NCBI RefSeq assembly: GCF_020745735.1
Contig: NW_026867443.1
Coordinates: 248,001-312,000 of the forward strand
Source of the DNA: Hemiscyllium ocellatum
Lineage: Eukaryota
Direction of reading: 5' to 3'
Length of the DNA stretch: 64,000 nt
The stretch's first letter is position 1. Every line of letters begins with the position of its first letter. Shown piece by piece: positions 18,495 through 44,182 of the stretch. The position numbers were made by a program, and so were the translations under genes. Under the pieces are notes generated by a model. The model was given only the letters and a program-made list of their open reading frames with translations, was not told the DNA's origin and searched no databases.

Positions 18495-19055
18495 AGTGCA
18501 GCACTGAGGAATGCAGCACTGTCAGAGAGCCAGTACTGAGGGAGTGCTGCACTGTCAGAGGGTCAGTATTGAGGGAGTACTGCACTAATGTTGGGTCAGT
18601 ACTGAGGCAGTGCTGCACTGTCAGAGAGTGAGTACTGAGGGAGTGTTGCACTGTCAGAGGGCCAGTACTGAGGGACTGCCACACTGTCAGAGGGTCAGTA
18701 CTGAGGGAGTATTGCACTGTTACAGAGTGAGTACTGAGGGAGTGCTGCACTGTCAGAGGGTGAGTACTGGGGGAGTGCTGCACTGCCAGAGGGTTCGTAC
18801 TGAGGGAATGCCACACTGTCTGAATGTCAATACTGTGGGAGTGCCATCCTGTCAGATAGTTCATGCTGAGGGAATGCTGCACTGCTGTTGTGTCAATACT
18901 GAGGGAGTGCAACACTGTCAGAGGTTCAGTGCTCAGAGACTATCTTTCAGATGGGTTGTTCTGATGTCTGCCCTCTCACGGGACAGTAGAAGATGCCATG
19001 ACACTATGAGAAGAGCAGAGCAGATCCCCAGGGTGTCCTGGTCAATATTTTAAAA
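18495..19055 (+). repeat. 33-bp tandem repeat (~13 units) fused to a SacSINE1/Deu-SINE-like body
   Basis: Unit ~ctgagggagtgctgcactgtcagagggtcagta, followed by tctttcagatg...ctgccctctca...gtgtcctggtcaatattt. Confidence 0.8.
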
Positions 19056-31099: not shown

Positions 31100-31105
31100 T
31101 TTATT
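31100..31105 (-). terminator. Polyadenylation signal of the kappa gene
   Basis: AATAAA ~530 nt after the stop codon; conserved in the paralogous relic at 20129-20134. Confidence 0.7.
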
Positions 31106-31630: not shown

Positions 31631-31959
31631 CTATACACATTCTGATTTACTGATGCTCTTGCTGAGGGGAGAGGGGAGGGTCACGTGGGTGAGGGCACAG
31701 GAAAAGCGAGCGTTGGACTCCCAGTCAGACCTAGAGAGGGTCAGCAGGCTGCTGACACTGTAGGTGCTGTCCGAAGCTCGCAGGTAGTTGCTGGTCTGAA
31801 CCCCGTCCGAAATGACTGCACCGTCCTTCTTCCACTGCACCTCCAGCTCATCGGGATAGAAGTGATTGGCAAGGCACACCAGGGTGGCAGTGCCCTTGGC
31901 ATTGATCTGCTCCGGGGAGGGGGGCAGCAGGGTCAGCTTGGGCTGAGAGTTGTCACGGA
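31631..31959 (-). CDS. IGKC: Ig kappa constant-region exon, intact
   Basis: Acceptor ttgtctttcAG|TC at 31961-31960; 329 nt = 2 nt plus 109 codons including TAG. (I)RDNSQPKLTLLPPSPEQINAKGTATLVCLANHFYPDELEVQWKKDGAVISDGVQTSNYLRASDSTYSVSSLLTLSRSDWESNARFSCALTHVTLPSPLSKSISKSECV*, with C1-set Cys/Trp/Cys and the penultimate interchain Cys. Confidence 0.97.
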
Positions 31960-33429
31960 CTGAAAGACAAAAGAAACAATTTTAATCCCTGCCTTTTGAA
32001 GGGAATTCAACCCTCACAATATTCACTGGCAATACAATCTTTTTGAACATTCTTAGTCAATACAGAATAAACCCAACAAATGAACAGACACTGTTCAAAT
32101 TGCTTCTTGCGATCTGAGTGTCACTGGCAGGGCCAGCATTCATTACCGTCCCTAGATGTCCCTGAGAAGGTGATGGTGAAGCAGCAGAGAGAGAAGGGAC
32201 AATTTTGGACCATCGGTAATGGAATGAATGTGGACAGCTGGAAGGGCTATCGATGGGGGAGCACTTTAGTGACAGCGATCAGAACTCAGTGAGATTGAGA
32301 GGAGGGATGGAAATGGAGAACCATGGAGCAAGTGTAAAAGTTTTCATTTTCCTAAACTGTGCGGTGCTTTGGTAAAAGTGGATCGGAACCAATGGCATGA
32401 TGGGAAATCAGTGTCAGGGCAGTGGGATCCCTCGAAGGATGAGACAGACTGTTCCGAATCTGTTCCCACAATGAGTAAGGGTGGGACTCCCACAACTAGA
32501 CCAAAGAAACAAGAGGATTGGGGTTCATGTACTGACATGGATTGGGAACTGGTTGGCAGGCAGCACAGAAAGAATGAGTCTATTTCTGAATGGCAGGTAA
32601 TAACAACTTAGGGTGCCACAGGGTCAGTCCTTGATACCCAGTTATTCATAATAAATAACAATAGAGTCATAGGGGCCCAAAAGACCCATTATTCCATTGT
32701 GTCCATACTGGTCAAAAAACAACAACCCAATAATTGTCATCCATTTTTCCAGCAAAAGGGAATTAGATGCAATATGTATTTAAGAAGGAATTAGATATAG
32801 TTCTTAGGATTGAAGGGATCAAAGAATGTGGCGAGAAAGTAGGAACAGGGGACTGTGTTGGATGAACAGCCATGATCATATTGAAGGGTGGAGCAGGCTT
32901 CAAGGGCTGAATGGCCTACTGATGCTCCTGTGTTTGATGTTTCTATCTGTTTCTCAGATAATGAAGGAATGTCTCTCATCATTTTGAAGCTGGAAGTCAG
33001 ATGTGTGTGGAGCTGGAAGATGTGGCCATGGTGATTAATGCAGGTCAGTGAGGTGGTTCAGAAGACACATGGGATAATATGCTTTTCTTTTTCCCTAAAT
33101 GGAATGAGGGCATTGCTGGATCGGCAGCATTTATTGCCCATCCCTAATCACCCAAAGGGCAGTTTAGAGTCACCCACATTGCTGTGGGTCTGGGGTCACA
33201 TGGTAAGGATGGCAGTTTTCTTCCCTAAAGGACATAAGGGAATCAGATGCTTTTCCTGACAATCAATGATGGTTTCATGGTCATCATTAGTCTCTTAATT
33301 GCAGATTTTGTTTTGATTGAATTTGAATGCCACCATCTGCTGGATTCTAACCCTGGTCCCCAGAACATTACCTGGATCTCTGGATTAACAGCTCAGCAAT
33401 AACACCATTAGACCATCACCTCCCTTATC

Positions 33430-33960
33430 TCATTTTTGGTTGACTGTGAAAGCAAGGAGTTTGTTTATTCTGGAACTGTATAAAACCCCAGTTAGAGCAC
33501 AGTGAGAGAACTGTGTACGGTTCTGGTCACCACATTACAGGAAGGATGTGATTCCATTAGAGATGGGGACAGAGGAGGAGTTTGTCTGGAATGGGGACTT
33601 TGAGCTTTGTGGAATGATTGGATTGGCTGGGACTGTTTTCTTTGGAACACAGGAGGCTGAGGGGAGATATGATGGTGGTGTGTAAAATGATGAGGGGCCT
33701 GGACAGAGTGGGTAGCAAGGACTGATTTCCACCAGCACAGAGGACAATAACCATGGGGAGAGATTGAAATCAGTTGGGGCAGGATTAGAGGGGAGTTGAG
33801 GGTATTTGTTTTCACCCAGAGCTTGGTGGGATGTGGGACTCACTGTCTGAAAGGGTGGGAGAGGCAGAAACCCTCATCAAATTGAAAAAACACTTAGATG
33901 TTCACTTGAAACAGCAAAACTTCCAGAGCTATGGAGCAAGAGCTGGAAAATGGGATGGAG
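33430..33960 (+). mobile_element. CR1 3' fragment in the J-C intron
   Basis: C-terminal CR1 ORF2 remnant. Confidence 0.7.
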
Positions 33961-34504
33961 CGTGATATCTCTTTAACAAACCTCCGATTACCCACAGATC
34001 AGGAGAACCTTATCCAAGAACATTGGAGCAGACTCGGATCCACACACGTCAGGAAAGAATCACGTTGGGGTGTCTGTGTAGAAGATTCTAGATTATATTT
34101 CAAACCTTGCTGCACAGTATTGGGCTGAGGTCAAGGGTGAGGCTGCAAAGAGTCTCAGTGTCCTAGAGTCAGACAGGGTCACTGCTCCTAATGACCCCAT
34201 GACTCCTGGAAGGTGAGAGTGCGCAGACAATGGATGAGGATCCTGATCAGGAGACTCCAACCTTCAAGAAAGACTTGCACTTGTGTAGCACCTGTCCCCA
34301 ACTCAGGGTGTCCCACTGGATCTTTCCAGCAGACTGTGCACAGCGAGATCCCAAACCCCATGTGATAATTAGCAGAGAAATACTATCTGAGTGATTTTGA
34401 CTGGGGGATAAATATTGACCAGGGAGACCAGGGGGAACTGCCTGCTCTTCATCCAATAGTGCCATGGAATGGCATCTTTCACAATTGAAAGACTCTCAGT
34501 TATT

Positions 34505-35185
34505 CCAAAAAATGAAGAATAGTTCCTTGAAGATGAAGTTGCAGGTACATAGGGAAGTGACAAAGTTATTTGGTTTGCTTTCCTTTACTTGTCAGTGCAT
34601 TGGGTATTGGAGTTGGGAGCTGTTGCGGCTGTACAGGACACTGGTTAGGGCACTTTTGGAATACTGTGTGCAATTCAGTTCTCCTTGCTGTAGGAAAAAT
34701 GTTGCGAATCTTAAAATGATTTACAAGGATGATGCCAAGGTTGGAGGGTTTGCATGAAAAGGAGAGGCTGAATAGGCTGAGGCTGTTTTCCCTGGATCAT
34801 TGCAGGTTGATGGGTGACCGTATCGAGGTTTATAAAATCATGAGCGGCATAGATAAGGTGAATAGAGAAGATTTTTTCTCCAGAGTTGGGGAGTCCAGAA
34901 CTGGAGGGCATAGGCTGAAGGTGACAGGGGATAGATTTAAAAGGGACCTAAGGGACAATGTTTTCATTCAGAGGGTGTTAAATGTATGGAATGAGCTGCC
35001 AGAGGAGGTGGTGAAGGCTGGTACAATTACAACATTTAAAAGACATGGGTATGTAAATAGGAAGATGTTAGAGGGATATGGGCCAAATGCTGGCAAGTGG
35101 GACTAGATTAATTTCGGATATCTGGTCAGCATGGACGAGTTGGACCAAAGGATCTGATTCTGTGCTGTCCATCTCTCTGACTCTA
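34505..35185 (+). mobile_element. CR1/HER1 3' end
   Basis: ORFs 34464-34757 and 34729-35106 (LRLYRTLVRALLEYCVQF; GHRLKVTGDRFKRDLR), then the tail. Confidence 0.88.
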
Positions 35186-35549
35186 ATTGTATTTCAATCC
35201 AGCCCTTAACACATCAGGCTCTCCCAAAGACATTTACAGGCAGTTTTGTTTGACAAACAGTCACTGTTGCAATGTCAGTAACGTGGCAGCCAGTTTCTGC
35301 ACAGCAAGATCCCACTAGAAGCAATGAGATCAAAGAGCAATAATGATGTTGGCTCAACGATAAATATTGGCCTGAACTCAACCCAAAGAGAAAGTAATTT
35401 GGTTCAGTTGGATGGAAAATGAGAAAATGGAAGGTAAAGGAGAAGGTAGGATTGCTGGATAGTGTTGGGATTGATTGTTACCAGAAAATAAAAGGAAGGG
35501 ATGGAATTTTTGAATATCAAAGGGATCATAAAAGTGCAGGGAAAATCAA

Positions 35550-38315
35550 CAATAGAACAAACTTAAAGAGTTTGTATCTAAATGCACAAAGCATTCTGAG
35601 TAAGGTTGACCGAGTGATGTCACAAATCCAGGTAAATTGAGTTTCCAAGGAATTTAAACTAGTTAAAGTTGAGGAGGGCTCAGGAAAGGTTATTCAAGTT
35701 TCTAGAAGATGTAAAAGGACAGAGAATGTGGAAAGGATCAGGAATCGAACATAAAGCACAGCAGATAAGGGGACAATGATGGGAAGGAGGGCAATCAATG
35801 CAGGACTAAGGGTGTTGTACTTAAATGCACACAATATACACAATGGGCTGGTAGTGCAGATTGAAACTGGCAGGTACGATGTTGTGGGTATCACAGGGAC
35901 ATGACTGAAAGGGAATTCGGGCTGGGAACTAAATATCCAAGGTTACATGTCCTATCAAAAGGACGAGCAGATGGGCAGAGGGGGAAGAGTTGCCTTGTTA
36001 GTGAGAAATGAAATTAAATCAATTGCAAGAAGTGATGTAGAGTTAGAAGGTGTAGAATCTGTGTGGGTAGAGCTGAGGAACTGCAATAAATAAAGAATCT
36101 GATGCAAGTTATGTCCAGGTCTCCAAGCAGTAATCAGGGTGTGGGGAAGGAAATCAGTCAGGAGACAGAAAATGTCAGGGCAGACGTCAATGGATAGGTG
36201 GGCTGGGTAGTGTATCTCAAGGAAAGGATTTCATGGAATGTCGACGAGATGGACTTTGGAGCAGCTTGTGGTTGAGCCATTATGGAACAGGCAGGTCTGG
36301 ATTCAGTGATGTGTATTGAGGCAAACTTGATTAGTGAGTTTAAGGTGAAAGTATCCCTGTGGATAAGTGACCATAATACGATAGAATTCCCCCTGTAGTT
36401 TGAGAGGGAGAAGCTGCAATCAGATTGAACAGTATTTCAGTTGAGTAAAGGTAACTCAATGTGGTGGAGAATAGTGGGAAGCCCGAGGATTAGGAAGCCT
36501 TTAAAAACCTGCAGGGGATAACTGAAAAAGCATTAAGGGTGGAGAATGTGAAATGTGGGAGTTATCTAGCCAGTAATATAAAAGAAGATTGCAGGAGTTT
36601 TATCAGGTGTATAAAGAGGAAGAGGGAGTCAAAAATAGACTATGGATTACTGGAAAATGAGGCTGGAGAAGGAATAACAGGAAATGAAGGAATAGCAGAG
36701 GAATTGAATAGATATTTTGCCTCAGTCTGCACCATGGAAAACACCAGCAGTGTCCCAGTAATTCAAGACTGTCAGGGGTCGGAGGGGAGTGCAGTGGCCA
36801 TCACTAAGGAGGAGGTACTGGGGAAGCTGAAAGGTCTGAATATGGATAACGCACCCAGACTGGATGAACTACACCCATGTGTTCTGAAGGAGATCACTGA
36901 GGAGATTGTGGAGGCATTGGTGATGATCTTTCAGTAATCAATGGAGTCAGGGTATGGAGGTGAGATGGGGCCGGATTTGGTGGGGGCAAGGGACAAGAAA
37001 ATGGCTCACATACCACCCCTGTTTCAGAAAGGAGGGAGGTAGAAGGTGGGACATTGTAGGCCAGTTAGCCAGGACTCAGTTGTTGGTAAGGTTTTAGACT
37101 TCAATTTAAGGATGAAATTGCAGAGGATTGGAAGTGCAATGGCTTCATCAAGGAGACGTCATGCCTGGCAAATCTGTTAGAATTCTTTGAGGAGGCAATG
37201 AGCCAGTCAGACAAAGGAGAGTCCGAGGAAGTAATCTCTTTGGATTTCCACAAGGCATTTGACATAAGATAAGCGCCCACAGTATTAGTGGCAATGTAGT
37301 GGCATGGATTGAAGACTGGCAGGTTGGCATAAAGCAGAGCATGAGGAACAATGGCCGCTGGTGACTAGTAGAGTTCTGCAGTTGTCAATGTTATGGCCAT
37401 AACTATTCACGTTACACATTAACAATCTGGATGAAGGAAGTGAAGACACTGTTGCTAAGTTTGCAGGTGACATGAGGTAGGTGGAGGGACAGAGTGTTGA
37501 GGAAGTGGGAAGGCTGTAAAATCTCCTGGATAGGCTCGGAGAGTGGGCAAAGAAGTGGCAGATAGAATACAATGTGTGACAGTGTGAGGGTGTGCACTTC
37601 GGGAAGAAGAAGAGATGCAAAAACTGTTTGCTAAATGAGGAAAGCCTTTGGAAATCTAAAGCACAAACCTCATTCAGGTTTCCCTTCAGTTTAACAGGCA
37701 GGTCCAGTTTGTGCTTGGGAAGGCAAATGAAATGTTCGCATTCATTTCAATAGGGCCAGAATACAAGAGCAGAGATGTACTGCTGAGGCTGTGTAAGGCT
37801 CTGGTCAGACTGCATTTGGAATATTGTGAGCAGATTAGGGACCCATATTCTAAGAAACAATGTGCTGGCATTGGAGGGGTTTACAAGAATGATCCTGGGG
37901 ATGAAAGGCTTGTCATATGAGGGGTGGTTGAGGACTCTGGGTCTGTACTCAATGGCGTTTAGAAGAATGAGGAGGGATCTTATTGAAATTTGCAGAATAC
38001 AGATAGGCCTGGATATAGTCGATGCAGGACAGACTCGGGAACCAAGGCACAGCCTCAGAATGAAGGGCCGACCCTTTTGAGCTGAGGTGAGGAGGAATTT
38101 CTTCAGCCAGAAGGTGGTGAATCTGTGGAACTCATTGTTACAGAGGGCAGGGGAGGCCAAGTCACTAAGTGTACTTAAGACAGACATAGATAGGTTCGTG
38201 ATTGTGAAGGGGATCGAACGTTCCTGTGGAGTAGGCAGGAGAATGGGGGTGAGAAGCATATCTGCCAAGATCAAATGGCAGAGCAGATTCAATGGGCTGA
38301 ATGGCTGATTTCTGC
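35550..38315 (+). mobile_element. CR1 ORF2 remnant (endonuclease, RT, 3' tail)
   Basis: YLNAQSI endonuclease start, ORF 36539-36937 linker, RT remnants, tail gggctgaatggc...ttctgctcctatttctt. Confidence 0.88.
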
Positions 38316-40989
38316 TCCTATTTCTTAAAGACTTCTGGAGAGTTTCCCCAAAACCTTGGAACACTGAACCCACTGGACTGTGAGCCCTCCTGGAGCTGTT
38401 TGTCATCAGAACTTTGCCAAGAGACAACCAAAGAGTGGAGAGAGTGTGCATCCATGTGGGAATTTCAGAATGTTTCCCAGCTACTGGAATACCATGAGTA
38501 CAGGAAGTGAAGTCTGTGACAGCAGTTAGAGCTCTGGGTTTTGGAGCTTGAGCAGCAGCTGGTGTCAGTGCAGAGCGTCTGTGAGGCTGAGAGCTCCGTG
38601 GAGAGCACGTTTCTAGATATGGTCACTCTGCAGCCTCAGAGTATGCAGGGAGAGAGGGAATGGGGGAGCAGCAGACAGTCCAAAAGGATCAGGCAGCTAG
38701 TATAAGAGTCCCCTGGCATCCTACTCTCCAACCAGGATACAGTTCAGAATCCTGATGAGAATGATGGTTCATCTGGAGAGTGCAGCCAGAGCCAAGTCCA
38801 TGGCATCACTGGTGACTCAGCTATAATGGGGGGTTGCCGGGGCGGGGGGGGAGGTGGGGGTGGTATTAGCAAGACTGGAAGAGTGATCGTGAAAGGAGAT
38901 TTGAGACTGAGGGCATCGATAGGTATTTCTGCAGCTGCAGATGGGAATCCAGGATGGTGTGTTGTCTCCCTGGTGCCAGCGTCAAGGATGTCACTGAGCG
39001 ACTGCAGAGCACCCTGAGGGGAGAGGGGGAACAGACAGCAGTCGTGGTCCACATCGGTCCCAGTGACAGTGGGAGAAAAGGGATGTAGTCCTGCAGTCAG
39101 AATTTAGGGAGCTCAGAAGGGAATTAACATCAGGAACTCAAAAGTAGGAATCTTCAGATTACTCCCAGTGGCCCAGGCAAGTGACAAGAGGAGCAGGAGG
39201 ATAACACAAGTGACTGTGGGGCTGGGAAGAGGATCCAGGAGGGAGGGTTTTAGATTCTTGTGACATTGGGAGTGGGTCTGGGGGAGATGGGACCTGGATA
39301 GACCAGACAGCGTTGCTCCTGAACAGAGCTGGCACTGAGCTCCTTTGAGGTGATCTACTCGTGCTGTTGGAGAGGGTTTAAACTAACTTGGCAGAGCTGT
39401 GGGAGTCAGGAGGGACTGTCAGAGAGGAACACCAAGGTCCACAGAATCATCAGTGCAGTCAATAATTTACCACCCAATGGGAAGGATTTAGAGGGATACA
39501 TTTGCAAGGAATTTACAGTGACCTGCAAATATAATAGTCATTACAAATGGGGTTGGGGGGGGGGGAATTTCTTTAATTTCTGAATATAGACTGGGGTAGT
39601 AGCAGTGTGAAGGACAGAGGGGCCAGAGTCGTGAGAGTGTGTTCATGTGAATTTTCTCCAGCCGCATGTTTCCAGTCCAATGAGAAAGGAGGCTCTGCTA
39701 GATCTGGATCTTGGGAATGAGGAGGCCCAAGTGGATCAAGTGTCAGTGAGAGGACAGTTAAGGAAGAGTGATCATTGTATCACAAAGTTGAGGGTGACGG
39801 TAGAAAAGAACAAAGGCCATTTCAGGGTCAAACCTCTTCACTGAGGAAAATGCCAGCTTCTATAGGATATGGATATATCGGATCTGAATAAAGTGGGATC
39901 AAAGGTTGGCAGGAAAGTCCTGAAAAGAATAGTAGAGGATGTGGACCAGGTATAGTCGAGATACATTTGAAGGAGGGCAAACAATTCCTGAACTTACTCA
40001 AGGGCAAAAGTGGTAGAATCATGGTAAATAAGAAAAGGGCAAAAGAGTAACTAGAGAGAGAATAGGGCCCCATGAAGATGAACAATGTACCTCTGGGTGG
40101 ATCCACAGGAAATGGTTTAGGTCTTAAATGAATATTCCAGGTCAGTATTTATCATGGAGAAAGACATGGAAATTTGGGAACTTGGGAAGTAAATAGTAAT
40201 GTCTTGACACAAGTCCACATTATAGAAGAGGATTTCTTAAAGTGCAAGACGGTAGATAAATCTCCAGGACCTGATCAGGTGTATCCCAGGACATTGTGGA
40301 AAGCTAGGAAAGAGATTGCTGGACCCCTTGCTGAGGTATGTTTCTGATTGACCGCCATGAGTGAGGTTCTGGAGAACCAGAGAGGTTGGCTAATGTTAGC
40401 CATTATTTAAGAAAGGCTGTAAGGAAAAGGCAGGGAACTATAAACCAGTGAGTCTGATGTCATTGCTGGGTAAGTTATTGGAGTGAATTCTGAGGGACAG
40501 GATTTGCATGCATTTGGAAATTAATGCAGTTTTGTGCATGGTAATCGTGTCTCACTAACATGATTGAGGTTGTTTGAAGAGAAGATTGGTGTAGGCAGAA
40601 CAGTATACACTGTCTATATGGACTTCAGCAAAGCATTTGACAAGGTTCGACATGATAGACTGATTAGTAAGATTAGGCCACATGGGATCCAGGGGGAGCT
40701 AGCCATTTGGGTAAAAAAAAATGACTTCAAGATAGGAGACAGAGAGTGGTGGTAAGTGGTTGCTTTTCAGACTGGAGGTCAGATGTCAGCTGTGTGCCAC
40801 AAGGATTGGTGCTGGGTCCATGGCTTTTAATCATTTAAATAAATGATTTGGACGTGAATATAGGAATTATGGCGAGTTTGTAAATGACACCAAAATTGGT
40901 GGTACAGTGGATAGTGAAGAAGCATATCTGAGAGTACAGTGGGACCTTGATCATTTGGGGAAATGGGCAGAGGTGTGGCAAATGGACAA

Positions 40990-41198
40990 AAGTGCAGACT
41001 GCAGATGCTGGAAACCAGAGTTTAGATCAGAGTGGTGCTGGAAAAGCACAGCATGTCAGGCAGCATCCGAGGAGCAGAAAAATCGACTTTTCAGCTAGAG
41101 GAATACTGACGAAGGGCTTTTGCCTGAAACGTCAATTATCCTGCTCCTCGGATGTTGCCTGACCTGCTGTGCTTTTCCAGCACCGCTCTGATCTAAAC
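40990..41198. mobile_element. Penelope pLTR fold-back (75-bp arms) with hammerhead core at 41106-41133
   Basis: 41020-41094 pairs with 41124-41198; CTGACGA-A-GGGC tttt GCCT-GAAA-CGTC. Confidence 0.85.
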
Positions 41199-41321
41199 GT
41201 GTGACAAATGGAGTTCAATTTAGATAAATGTGAGATGTTGCATTTTGGAAAATCAAACCAGGGCAGGACTTGTACTGTTAATGGTGGGGCCCTGTGGGGT
41301 GTTGCTCAACAAAGTGACCTC

Positions 41322-41463
41322 GGGGTGCAGGGGCAGGGGCAAGTGCAGGGTGCAGGGGCAGGGGCAGTGGCCGGTGCAGGGGCAGGGGCAGTGGCAGGTG
41401 CAGGGTGCAGGGGCAGGTGCAGGGGCAGTGGCAGGGGCAGGTGCATGGGCAGGGGCAGGGGCA
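41322..41463. repeat. G-rich hexamer repeat (GCAGGG/GCAGGT/GCAGTG)n
   Basis: About 23 six-base units inside the CR1. Confidence 0.9.
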
Positions 41464-42129
41464 TTATTCCTTGACAGTGAAGTCATAGGGAGACGGAGAT
41501 GAAGAAGGTGTTGGGTACACTTGCCTTTATTGGTCACTGCACTAAGTATCAGAGTTGGGACATCATTTGCAGCTGTACAGGAAATTGGTGAGGCTACTTT
41601 GGGAATAATGTGAACAATTCTGATCATCCTGTGATAGGAAGGATGCTGTTAAACTTAAAATTCTGGAGAAAAGATTTACATGGATGTTGCCTGGAACTGG
41701 AGGGTTTGAACTGTCGGAAGAGGTTATTTTTCCTGCAGGATCGGAGACTGAGGGGTGGCCTTATAGATGTTTATAAAATCTTGACAGGCATGGACAGGGT
41801 GTACATCCCAGGTCTTTGCCTTGGGAAAGGGAATGCAAAACTAGAGGGTATAGGTTTAAGATGAGAGGCAAAAGATCCAAAAGGGACCTGAGGGGTAACT
41901 TGTCACACAGAGGGTGGTGCGTGTCCAGATCGAGCTGTCAGAGAAAATGCTGGAGACAGATACAATTATAACATTTAAAAGATGTTTGGATGGGTACATG
42001 AATAGGAAGGGTTTAGAGGGATGTGGGCTAAATGCTGGCAAATGGGATGAGGTCAGTTTTGGATATCTAGTTAGCATGGAGGAGTTAGACCGAAAGATCT
42101 GTTTCCACGCTGTCTGACTCTGTGAACAT

Positions 42130-42950
42130 TAGTGGCTGGAAAAACTGAGATCTTTTACCCTGAAGTGCCGGAGGCTGAGGAGTGACCTTATAGAGGTTTA
42201 TAAAATCATGAGGGACATAAATAATGTGAATAATGCAGGAAGGAGGTGAATGTTTTGTAGAGCTGGCAAACATATGCACAAAGATCATTCCAGAGATGAG
42301 GAATATCAGTTCTGAAGATAGATTGGAGAATTTGGGACTGTCTTCTTTGGAGAAAATTACAGATCACACAACATCAGGTTATAGTCCAACAGGTTAATGT
42401 GGAAGCACTAGCTTTTGGAGCACCGCTGACAACCATTTGATGAAGGAGGGGCGCTCCGAAAGCTAGTGCTTCCAAATAAACCCCCTGTTGGACTATAACC
42501 TGGTGTTGTGTGATTTTTAACTTTGTCCACCCCAGTCCAACACCGGCACCTTCAAGTCTTTGGAGAAGGCAGCGAGGAGAATTGTTCCAGAAATTCAAAA
42601 TCAGGAGGGGCCTGGAACAGAGTAAATAGGGAGAAAATGATTCCACTTGTGAAAGGATTGAGACCGAGAGGCCACAGATTGAAAGTAATTGGAAAAGTAA
42701 GAAAAGTGAGATGAGGGAAAACATTTTCAGCCAGTGAGTGGTTAAGGTGTGGAATGCACTGCCTGAGAGTGTGGTGGAGGCAGCTTCAATTGAAACATTC
42801 CGAAGGGAATGAGACTGTTATTTGAAAAGGAACAATGTGCAGGGTGACAGGGAGAAGGCAGGAGAATGACACTCAGTGAATTGCTCATTCGGAGAGCTAG
42901 TCCAGACAGGATGGAAGGAATGGCCTCCTTGTGCACTGTAACAATTCTGT
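42130..42950 (+). mobile_element. CR1 3' fragments with a Penelope pLTR fold-back at 42363-42551
   Basis: 42363-42421 pairs with 42453-42514; TTGATGA-AGGAG gggcg CTCC-GAAA-GCTA. Confidence 0.75.
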
Positions 42951-43007
42951 GATTGTGTGATTGAGCAGAGTTAAAGCTGGGGGAGGTGGGAGCTCGGTGT
43001 CTCACTG

Positions 43008-43008
<1 letters not shown>

Positions 43009-43041
<33 letters not shown>
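43009..43041. repeat. (GCT)11 trinucleotide repeat in the J-C intron
   Basis: Direct inspection. Confidence 0.95.
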
Positions 43042-43042
<1 letters not shown>

Positions 43043-43417
43043 AGGTCAGTGAGATCAGAGACTGGGACAGGGAGCCAGAGCTCACATCAAACTCTGCCCC
43101 GTGTCCGTCACACTGAGACTGGCAGGAGGCTACTCACTGATTTCACTCCATGCTGCAGGAATGGGACCACAGGCTGCAAATGGACAGAGCTCCTCCACAC
43201 GGTGAGTAAAACTTACTGACTTATATCTTGCTTTTTTTAAAGAGGGCATGAAAGTAAAGAAATACAGCTGGACACCCTGTTAGACACAGTGCTCCTCAAT
43301 CAACCATTTCATTCACTGCAGCTCCCCACTAACACCTTCAACAAATCAGTAACTGTATTTTAGAAAGTGTGTTTCAGTATTGACAGGGTTAATAACAGAG
43401 GATTGAGGTTTACTTAC

Positions 43418-43448
43418 TCAGTCTGAGCTTGGTTCCTTTACCGAACGT
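43418..43448 (-). CDS. IGKJ: Ig kappa J segment ([10 protein letters not shown]), pre-joined to V
   Basis: ACG TTC GGT AAA GGA ACC AAG CTC AGA CTG A|GTAAGT: FGxG motif and canonical phase-1 donor at 43417-43412. No heptamer/nonamer between V and J. Confidence 0.95.
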
Positions 43449-43742
43449 AGGAGCTGCTACCCTGCTGACAGTAATAGTCAGCGACATCCTCATTCTGAAC
43501 GTTGCTGATTGTCAGGGTGAAACTGGTCCCTGATCCACTGCCGGTGAATCGATCGGAGATTCCTGTGAATCGAGTTGCTGCAGCATAGATCAGGAGAGAG
43601 GGTTTCTGATCTTCTCGCTGCTGGTACCAAACAAGGTAGCTGCTAATGCTTTGACTGGCCTTACAGGTGATGGTTGCGGTCTGGCCCAGTCCCACTGACA
43701 GCACCGGGGGAGACTGGGTCATGGTGATGTCCCCACTGATAC
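43449..43742 (-). CDS. IGKV: Ig kappa (type III/NS4-like) V segment, open frame, fused directly to J
   Basis: Acceptor ...ctctgacccctcAG|GT at 43743/43742. Translates [98 protein letters not shown], with both Cys, the core Trp and DxADYYC. Confidence 0.97.
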
Positions 43743-43928
43743 CTGAGGGGTCAGAGAGAAACACAGTGAAGTCAGAACTGTCACACAAAGAGCCAGTCAA
43801 ATGAGAGATTGTTGGAGACACTGAGCATTCCTCTGGTTTCAGCATTTTCCCTTCAATCACAAGTCAGTGGAATTGGAGTGAAATGGAGAGCAGCTAAAGA
43901 TTCAAGGTGGAAGGAGAGAGATTTGTAC

Positions 43929-43977
43929 CTGCGACACAGAATGCCAGGGGCCAGATCAGCTGGATGTGTGAAATCAT
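43929..43977 (-). CDS. IGKV: Ig kappa leader exon (MISHIQLIWPLAFCVA-G)
   Basis: ATG at 43977 in Kozak context (accATG); 16 hydrophobic codons plus 1 nt, then GT donor at 43928-43927 (GCAG|GTACAA). The 186-bp intron 43743-43928 ends in a pyrimidine tract and CAG. Confidence 0.93.
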
Positions 43978-44037: not shown

Positions 44038-44117
44038 TTTATAAAGCTGCAGCCTGTGAGAGTCTGACTGGGTGTTCCTCAGTATGTAAATGGGATCAGG
44101 CAGAGAGAGCCACGTCA
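44038..44117 (-). promoter_or_regulatory. V-kappa promoter: TATA box, variant octamer, CRE/UPRE-like site
   Basis: On minus: TATAAA at 44043-44038; ATTTACAT (one mismatch to ATTTGCAT) at 44091-44084, ~107 bp upstream of the ATG; TGACGTGG at 44117-44110. Confidence 0.7.

Positions 44118-44131: not shown

Positions 44132-44177
<46 letters not shown>
44132..44177. repeat. (CT)23 microsatellite just upstream of the V promoter
   Basis: Direct inspection. Confidence 0.95.

Positions 44178-44182
<5 letters not shown>

What the first reader, a model, noticed from the sequence alone, without database searches (positions are those of the whole stretch)
43418..43742. Pre-joined but out-of-frame VJ-kappa in an otherwise intact gene
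Seen: V runs directly into J (CAG CAG GGT AGC AGC TCC T|ACG TTC GGT AAA) with no RSS or intervening DNA. The 1-nt offset creates TAA at 43440-43438, while promoter, leader, splice sites, V framework, J and C are all intact. Established: cartilaginous fish carry germline-joined Ig genes attributed to RAG activity in germ cells, including in the NS4/kappa isotype. Inference: this is a recent heritable RAG-made coding joint with trimming, inherited before any decay, or an allele polymorphic for the join.
Basis: partly seen in the sequence, partly recalled or inferred. Interest (0 to 1): 0.8.

Follow-up and report, generated by a model that had tools for sequence, protein, structure and literature searches.

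The report
Out-of-frame pre-joined shark kappa gene
A shark antibody light-chain (kappa) gene has its V and J pieces already fused in the assembled genome, one base out of frame, so it cannot make a light chain; fused genes of this kind, including out-of-frame ones, were described in nurse shark in 2000.

Summary
On the minus strand lies one complete kappa (NS4/type III) cluster. It has a promoter, a leader (43977-43929), a fused VJ exon (43742-43418), an 11.5-kb intron and a C exon (31959-31634). V runs into J with no RSS anywhere in the window. Five split paralogs from Chiloscyllium punctatum carry V-12RSS, 408-681 bp, then 23RSS-J exactly where this gene has nothing. The Cys-to-Phe stretch is 22 nt, so J is +1 out of frame and the V frame stops at TAA 43440-43438. 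Everything else matches the family consensus.

Best reading: a RAG-type coding joint carried in the genome, trimmed about 5-6 nt on V and 2-3 on J, with no N bases needed, and non-productive.

Not shown: inheritance. No public run served here contains the junction, and the source reads were not available. "Recent" is not required either, because at shark substitution rates an intact frame can last tens of millions of years. A 2-nt loss after an in-frame join is not excluded.

The kind is known. Lee et al. 2000 found six joined NS4 genes, two of them pseudogenes, one being 1 nt off in CDR3. This scan's first readers flagged many other joined kappa genes, several out of frame, elsewhere in this genome. 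Verdict: new member of a known kind, modest interest.

The parts
44084..44091 (-). Octamer-like promoter motif ATTTACAT
   Evidence: Identical in the three split C. punctatum paralogs whose held sequence reaches the motif (L001-L003; L004 and L005 start downstream of it). The canonical octamer is ATTTGCAT (own knowledge).
44038..44043 (-). TATAAA box
   Evidence: Conserved in the alignment with the four paralogs whose held sequence covers it (L001-L004; L005 starts downstream).
43929..43977 (-). Leader exon coding part (ATG 43977-43975; 16 codons plus 1 nt), followed by donor GT at 43928-43927
   Evidence: Translation MISHIQLIWPLAFCVA(G) is identical to the C. punctatum leaders.
43743..43928 (-). 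Leader intron (186 nt), retained in the genome copy
   Evidence: About 98% identical to L001. Its presence shows the gene is not a processed cDNA copy.
43450..43742 (-). V part of the fused exon (end of leader, FR1 to CDR3 ...CAGCAGGGTAGCAGCTCC)
   Evidence: Pfam V-set 2.5e-16. 85-86% identical to C. punctatum kappa V and 55-67% to mammalian V-kappa. All invariant framework residues are present.
43418..43449 (-). J part (TACG TTC GGT AAA GGA ACC AAG CTC AGA CTG A), +1 relative to the V frame
   Evidence: Matches split J segments of L001-L004 and of organism A contigs from TACG/ACG onward. Donor GTAAGT at 43417-43412.
43438..43440 (-). TAA stop in the V frame, ending 20 nt before the J splice donor
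31960..43417 (-). J-C intron, 11.5 kb, rich in transposon debris (reverse-transcriptase fragment about 40564-40755, minisatellite 41327-41463)
   Evidence: Its first part is collinear with the post-J sequence of L001, so a long intron is normal for this family.
31634..31959 (-). C-kappa exon (acceptor ...tctttcag; stop TAG 31633-31631)
   Evidence: Pfam C1-set 3e-23. 76-84% identical to shark C regions P0036-P0038. Open frame with conserved cysteines.
31100..31105 (-). AATAAA, the only polyadenylation-like signal within about 630 nt after the stop
   Evidence: Its use is inferred, not shown.

Best explanation
This is a germline-joined, non-productive kappa (NS4/type III) light-chain cluster of a shark close to Chiloscyllium. 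In a germ-line cell of an ancestor, a RAG-type recombinase cut at the 12-RSS of V and the 23-RSS of J of an ordinary split cluster. The ends were nibbled by about 5-6 nt on V and 2-3 nt on J and ligated without added bases. The 0.4-0.7 kb between them, carrying both RSSs, was lost. The joint came out one base off, giving a 22-nt CDR3. Any transcript would therefore stop at TAA, 20 nt before the J-C splice, and no light chain can be made. With both RSSs gone and only one V and one J in the cluster, no second rearrangement can rescue it. The cluster is a fixed non-productive allele drifting neutrally, and it still looks intact because shark sequences change slowly. Shown here: the fused anatomy, the frame, and the integrity of all other parts. 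Inferred: the enzyme, the germ-line origin, and that the frame was wrong from the start.
For: The sequence and frame are read. No RSS is present. Five split paralogs (L001-L005) have V-CACAGTG-12-ACAAAAACC, then 408-681 bp, then GGTTTTTGT-23-CACTGTG-J, and the window is collinear on both sides of exactly that segment. Split V and J ends nearly identical to this gene's ends occur in public contigs of two related organisms: V ...CAGCAGGGTAGCAGCT-GGCCTT|heptamer, V ...AGCTCCCCTA|heptamer, and J heptamer|GC-TACGTTCGG. Every base of the joint can therefore be templated. The leader intron and the J-C intron are retained, so this is not a cDNA copy. The window is one gapless 64-kb stretch with more than 20 kb of flank on each side, which is hard to obtain from a rare somatic clone. 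Lee et al. 2000 (PMC2193156) showed from erythrocyte DNA and several individuals that about 10% of roughly 50 nurse shark NS4 genes are germline-joined. Those joints were trimmed with little N addition. Four of six were in frame and two were pseudogenes, and R19 needed one CDR3 base removed to restore the frame. First-reader notes of this scan list many other joined kappa genes in this genome, some beside split paralogs (unchecked).
Against: No independent read evidence for the junction was obtained. The four laid runs are short unitigs, and none of the listed pieces bridges 43449/43450. Ten runs from two organisms all hold the same 5 of 7 index words around the joint, so the junction words are probably absent from every served run. 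The window's private bases at 43786 and 44094 are also unseen there. The tissue and reads behind the assembly are unknown to me. The precursor split cluster of this very gene is not available, so the trimming counts rest on paralogs from related species. The frame defect could postdate the join.
Confidence: 0.72

Rival explanations
1. The gene was joined in frame in the germ line as a working pre-assembled light chain. It later lost two bases, or gained one, inside CDR3, so it is a decayed functional joined gene rather than a joint that was non-productive from the start.
For: Split paralogs end ...AGCTCCCCT(A/TGA). A join keeping ...TCCCCT plus ACGTTC gives a 24-nt in-frame CDR3 (QQGSSSPT) that differs from the observed sequence only by CC in a run of four C, a typical slippage site. 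Four of six nurse shark joined NS4 genes are in frame and are expressed in pups (PMC2193156).
Against: A priori, two thirds of unselected joints are out of frame, so no later event is needed. Nothing else in the gene has decayed. No in-frame relative of this joint was seen.
Confidence: 0.15
2. The fused gene is real, but the one-base offset is an assembly consensus error, and the true gene is an in-frame germline-joined kappa.
For: The junction could not be checked against the source reads. Runs served here do not hold it.
Against: The junction (...AGCTCCTACGTT...) has no homopolymer longer than two, which is where long-read consensus errors concentrate (own knowledge). The rest of the exon matches the family consensus without indels. 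Several other out-of-frame joints were flagged in the same genome (unchecked), and random errors would not target CDR3.
Confidence: 0.06
3. The assembly captured a somatic B-cell rearrangement, so the joint is not inherited.
For: Non-productive VJ joints are common in B cells. No independent sample shows the joint.
Against: Each B cell has a different joint, and most cells in any tissue keep the split form, so a consensus assembly should show the split form. The fused gene sits in the middle of a gapless 64-kb stretch. The joint needs no N bases, as in germline joints and unlike shark cDNA joints (PMC2193156).
Confidence: 0.04
4. An ordinary deletion unrelated to RAG removed the V-J spacer.
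For: None specific.
Against: Both endpoints fall within about 6 nt of the heptamer borders defined by five split paralogs. By a rough estimate of my own, a random deletion of 0.4-0.7 kb would do this well under once in a thousand.
Confidence: 0.02

Closest known systems
Nurse shark germline-joined NS4 pseudogenes R19 and R6 (Lee, Fitch, Flajnik and Hsu, J Exp Med 2000; PMC2193156)
   Same: Same isotype (NS4/type III/kappa) and same cluster layout. V is fused to J without RSS, the introns are kept, the octamer is kept, the joint is trimmed with little or no N addition, and the gene is non-productive. R19 needs one CDR3 base removed to restore the frame.
   Different: R19 also carries stop codons and R6 has many disruptions. 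This gene has no defect other than the frame. It comes from a different species, with V 85-86% identical to Chiloscyllium punctatum. Inheritance was shown for the nurse shark genes but not here.
Nurse shark in-frame germline-joined NS4 genes R4, R7, R18 and RE18
   Same: Same origin and anatomy, arising from split genes by independent events dated to a few Myr or more.
   Different: Those are in frame, potentially functional, and expressed in pups. This one cannot encode a light chain.
Split kappa clusters of Chiloscyllium punctatum (BEZZ01005289, BEZZ01019071, BEZZ01055339, BEZZ01107737, BEZZ01197680; loci L001-L005)
   Same: 88-92% identical over promoter, leader, intron, V, J and post-J intron. 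Same octamer-like motif, leader and [10 protein letters not shown].
   Different: They keep V-12RSS, 408-681 bp, and 23RSS-J. The window has none of it.
Uniformly germline-joined light chains (lambda/type II in all cartilaginous fish studied; type I in skates; PMC2192082, PMC5192425)
   Same: Pre-joined VJ in the germ line.
   Different: There, whole isotypes are joined and functional. Here, the joined gene is a non-productive member of a mostly split family.

Membership tests
Ig kappa (NS4 / type III) light-chain cluster of cartilaginous fish | V domain of kappa type | tested here: met
   Pfam V-set 2.5e-16. Best hits are C. punctatum and S. torazame V genes (75-86%), then mammalian 'Ig kappa chain V' at 55-67%.
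Ig kappa (NS4 / type III) light-chain cluster of cartilaginous fish | Single C1-set constant exon spliced from J in phase 1 | tested here: met
   C1-set 3e-23. The predicted splice ...LRL-I-RDNSQP matches the J-C junction of cDNA-like P0036 and P0037.
Ig kappa (NS4 / type III) light-chain cluster of cartilaginous fish | Kappa RSS arrangement in split family members (12-spacer at V, 23-spacer at J) | tested here: met
   Found at V in L001-L005 and at J in L001-L004 (L005's held sequence has no J). It cannot apply to this gene itself, which has no RSS.
Ig kappa (NS4 / type III) light-chain cluster of cartilaginous fish | Minicluster organisation with one V, one J and one C | tested here: met
   Only one V, one J and one C motif are found in the 64 kb.
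Germline-joined Ig gene | V and J contiguous, with RSSs and intervening DNA absent | tested here: met
Germline-joined Ig gene | Genomic introns retained (not a processed cDNA insert) | tested here: met
   The 186-nt leader intron and the 11.5-kb J-C intron are present.
Germline-joined Ig gene | Present in non-lymphoid or germ-cell DNA and shared by individuals | tested here: inconclusive
   No listed contig of four public runs bridges the joint, and ten runs hold only 5 of 7 index words. The runs appear to be from related organisms, not the source.
RAG coding joint | Endpoints at the heptamer/coding borders, with only small trimming or addition | tested here: met
   Relative to split paralogs, V keeps 18-19 of 24 nt after Cys and J keeps 4 of 6-7 nt before TTC.
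RAG coding joint | P or N nucleotides at the joint | tested here: inconclusive
   Zero are needed if the precursor V ended ...AGCTCC.... Two (CC) are needed if it was like the organism B paralog ...AGCTGGCCTT. The true precursor is unknown.

The most novel reading that the evidence does not exclude
This joint is young and perhaps still polymorphic, and it is one of an unusually large set of germline VJ joints in this genome with a near-random share of out-of-frame products. That would mean RAG cuts Ig clusters in germ cells of this lineage often enough for the rate and spectrum of heritable V(D)J recombination to be measured directly. As a side possibility, the stop lies only 20 nt before the last exon junction. 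The transcript might therefore escape nonsense-mediated decay and yield a secreted V-only protein lacking the J strand.
Probability: 0.15. Interest if true: 0.55.

Novelty: new member of a known kind. Interest (0 to 1): 0.3.

Why it matters
Germline-joined Ig genes are the main evidence that RAG still acts on the germ line of some vertebrates. In-frame joints can be kept by selection, but out-of-frame joints cannot. Their number, age and junction anatomy therefore report the raw, unselected output of germline recombination. One more such gene adds little by itself. A whole-genome census of joined clusters, counting in-frame against out-of-frame and finding each one's nearest split paralog, would give a first rate estimate and would test whether in-frame joints are enriched by selection.

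Tried and rejected
1. Read support: two index searches and the single read-laying run. The runs are Logan unitigs of related organisms, broken at every paralog branch point. They gave split V and J ends but no verdict on the joint.
2. Exact look-up of this gene's ORFs in the 15-billion-protein collection: absent, so no other contig carrying the joint could be fetched.
3. Motif scan for further V, J or C segments in the window: only this one cluster.
4. RSS scans, strict and relaxed: nothing.
5. Processed-cDNA origin: rejected because both introns are present.
6. 'Recent because undecayed': rejected as an argument after the decay estimate.
7. The long J-C intron as a defect: rejected, since it is collinear with a C. 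punctatum paralog. Other complete kappa genes noted in this genome span a similar length of about 12.5 kb (unchecked).
8. Pfam scan of the other long ORFs in the window: only a weak reverse-transcriptase fragment.
9. Expression could not be tested because no read-laying run was left.

Full report
**What is there**

The gene lies on the minus strand.
- An octamer-like ATTTACAT (44091-44084) and a TATAAA box (44043-44038) precede the ATG at 43977.
- The leader exon ends at 43929 before a GT donor. A 186-nt intron follows.
- The second exon runs from 43742 to 43418 and is followed by GTAAGT.
- In the V frame it reads [12 protein letters not shown]...WYQQ...[13 protein letters not shown] and then TAA (43440-43438).
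- The J motif FGKGTKLRL is in the +1 frame. Cys and Phe are 22 nt apart.
- The only constant exon in the window is 11.5 kb downstream (31959-31634, stop at 31633-31631).
- Pfam calls V-set (2.5e-16) and C1-set (3e-23).
- No other V, J or C motif exists in the 64 kb, and there is no RSS.

**Whose gene it is**

The best protein matches are unnamed Chiloscyllium punctatum V genes (85-86% identity) and one Scyliorhinus torazame gene. Mammalian V-kappa follows at 55-67%. The window therefore comes from a shark close to, but probably not identical with, C. punctatum. The isotype is kappa (NS4/type III).

**Proof that V and J are fused**

Several C. punctatum gene models read through the V end into a heptamer and nonamer. 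I fetched five of their contigs as L001-L005.
- Each has V-CACAGTG-12 nt-ACAAAAACC. L001-L004 then have 408-681 bp followed by GGTTTTTGT-23 nt-CACTGTG-J; L005's held sequence stops before any J.
- BLAST shows the window collinear with them from the promoter to the V end (about 43452). It is collinear again from J (43448) into the J intron, and nothing lies between.
- The multiple alignment shows the same.
- Both deletion endpoints lie within a few bases of the two heptamer borders. This is the signature of RAG cleavage followed by end joining, not of a random deletion.

**The joint**

Split V genes carry 24 nt after the Cys codon in four of the five paralogs. This gene keeps 18-19 of them (...CAGCAGGGTAGCAGCTCC).

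Split J segments carry 6-7 nt before TTC: GCATACG in L003, GTACACG in L004, and GCTACG in a public contig of organism A. This gene keeps TACG.

Loose ends in public contigs also show two split V genes near this one's V end. One is identical to it up to ...GGTAGCAGCT and then continues GGCCTT|heptamer. The other ends ...AGCTCCCCTA|heptamer.

The joint therefore needs about 5-6 nt trimmed from V and 2-3 from J, with no untemplated base, or at most two. Lee et al. described the same pattern for nurse shark germline joints, in contrast to N-rich cDNA joints (PMC2193156).

**Is the rest intact?**

Yes.
- The promoter motifs, ATG, leader and all four splice sites match the paralogs.
- The whole V exon equals the family consensus outside the CDRs.
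- Every invariant framework residue is present.
- Splicing J to C in phase 1 gives ...LRL-I-RDNSQPKLTLLPPS. This has the same architecture as two cDNA-like shark sequences that sit as contaminants in bacterial records (P0036 and P0037).
- The C exon keeps both domain cysteines and the terminal Cys.
- The long J-C intron is not a defect. Its first part is collinear with the post-J sequence of L001.

**Consequences**

In the V frame a transcript would encode leader plus V and stop after ...QQGSSSYVR, without the J strand and without C. With both RSSs gone and one V and one J per cluster, no second rearrangement can repair it.

The stop ends 20 nt before the last exon junction. By the mammalian 50-55-nt rule (own knowledge), the message might escape nonsense-mediated decay. 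Whether the locus is transcribed was not tested.

**Is it inherited?**

This is the weak point. Two index searches found no run with more than 0.69-0.71 of the words. For the 111 bases around the joint, ten runs from five samples and two organisms all hold exactly 5 of 7 words. About 2.4 of 7 words are expected to span the joint, so the joint words are probably absent from all of them. I cannot see which words are missing.

The single read-laying run used organisms A and B, two runs each. It returned only short unitigs, and none of the listed pieces bridges 43449/43450. The window's private bases at 43786 and 44094 are not seen in any of the four. These runs look like related species or other paralogs, not the source.

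Germline status therefore rests on indirect arguments:
- The fused gene sits in the middle of a gapless 64-kb stretch.
- A consensus assembly should show the majority split form.
- The joint lacks N bases.
- The phenomenon is established for this isotype.

**Is it recent?**

Not necessarily. Lee et al. dated a 99%-identical joined/split pair to 7 Myr, which implies about 0.7e-9 substitutions per site per year.

I counted 26.7 stop-creating site equivalents, 11 start and splice bases, and indels at 5-10% of the substitution rate over 699 coding nt. An undamaged frame then survives a median of 6-24 Myr, with a 95% bound of 28-100 Myr. 'Undecayed' is weak evidence of youth.

The frame could also have been lost after an in-frame join. 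...TCCCCTACG would be a 24-nt in-frame CDR3 (QQGSSSPT), and the observed sequence differs from it by CC in a C run. I give that 0.15.

**Comparison with what is known**

Lee, Fitch, Flajnik and Hsu (2000) reported the following for nurse shark NS4:
- About 50 NS4 genes, roughly 10% of them germline-joined.
- Six joined genes cloned from erythrocyte-derived libraries, found in several individuals, and arising by at least five independent events.
- Four in frame, and expressed in pups.
- Two pseudogenes. R19 needs one CDR3 base removed to align, and R6 is heavily disrupted.

[quoted passage not shown] The present gene is the same kind of object in another species. It differs only in having no second defect.

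First-reader notes of this scan list many further joined kappa genes in the same genome, several out of frame and some next to split twins. I could not check those, but they fit a family-wide pattern rather than a one-off.

**Verdict**

The RAG-type germline joint is the best explanation (0.72), followed by post-join frame loss (0.15), assembly indel (0.06), somatic capture (0.04) and non-RAG deletion (0.02). This is a new member of a known kind, with modest interest. Its value would come from a genome-wide census of joints.

Noticed in passing
L002:2325-2375, L003:907-960, L004:584-640: Three of five split C. punctatum kappa V genes end ...CCT TGA or ...CTC GA directly against the heptamer. 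In L002 and L003 this is an in-frame TGA as the last V codon. An untrimmed join would therefore carry a stop, and trimming is obligatory for a productive light chain.
   Followed up: partly
L001:10300-10320 and L001:11250-11262; L002:2349-2356 and L002:2800-2812: Some split C. punctatum clusters are themselves crippled. L001 has Tyr in place of the first domain Cys and GG instead of GT at the J donor. L002 has degenerate heptamers (CACAATG at V, CAAAGTG at J).
   Followed up: partly
P0036, P0037, P0031: Shark Ig light-chain sequences are filed as proteins of Aeromonas veronii and Salmonella enterica assemblies. This is almost certainly host or sample contamination of bacterial records.
   Followed up: no
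window 43438-43418: The premature stop ends only 20 nt upstream of the J-C exon junction. By the mammalian 50-55-nt rule, a transcript might not be a target of nonsense-mediated decay.
   Followed up: no
window 40564-40755 (+), 41327-41463, about 43009-43041, 44132-44182: The J-C intron and promoter flank hold a weak reverse-transcriptase fragment (RVT_1, E 0.0015, below Pfam's cut-off), a GCAGGG minisatellite, a (CAG)n run and a (GA)n run. The (GA)n run just upstream of the promoter is also present in C. punctatum paralogs.
   Followed up: partly
window 18499-18930: A 33-bp tandem array of about 13 copies at 75% match, of unknown meaning, well outside the Ig cluster.
   Followed up: no
window 43786 and 44094: There are two bases where (nearly) every public contig from organisms A and B reads a different letter than the window. 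They are useful as locus-specific markers for PCR or read mapping.
   Followed up: partly
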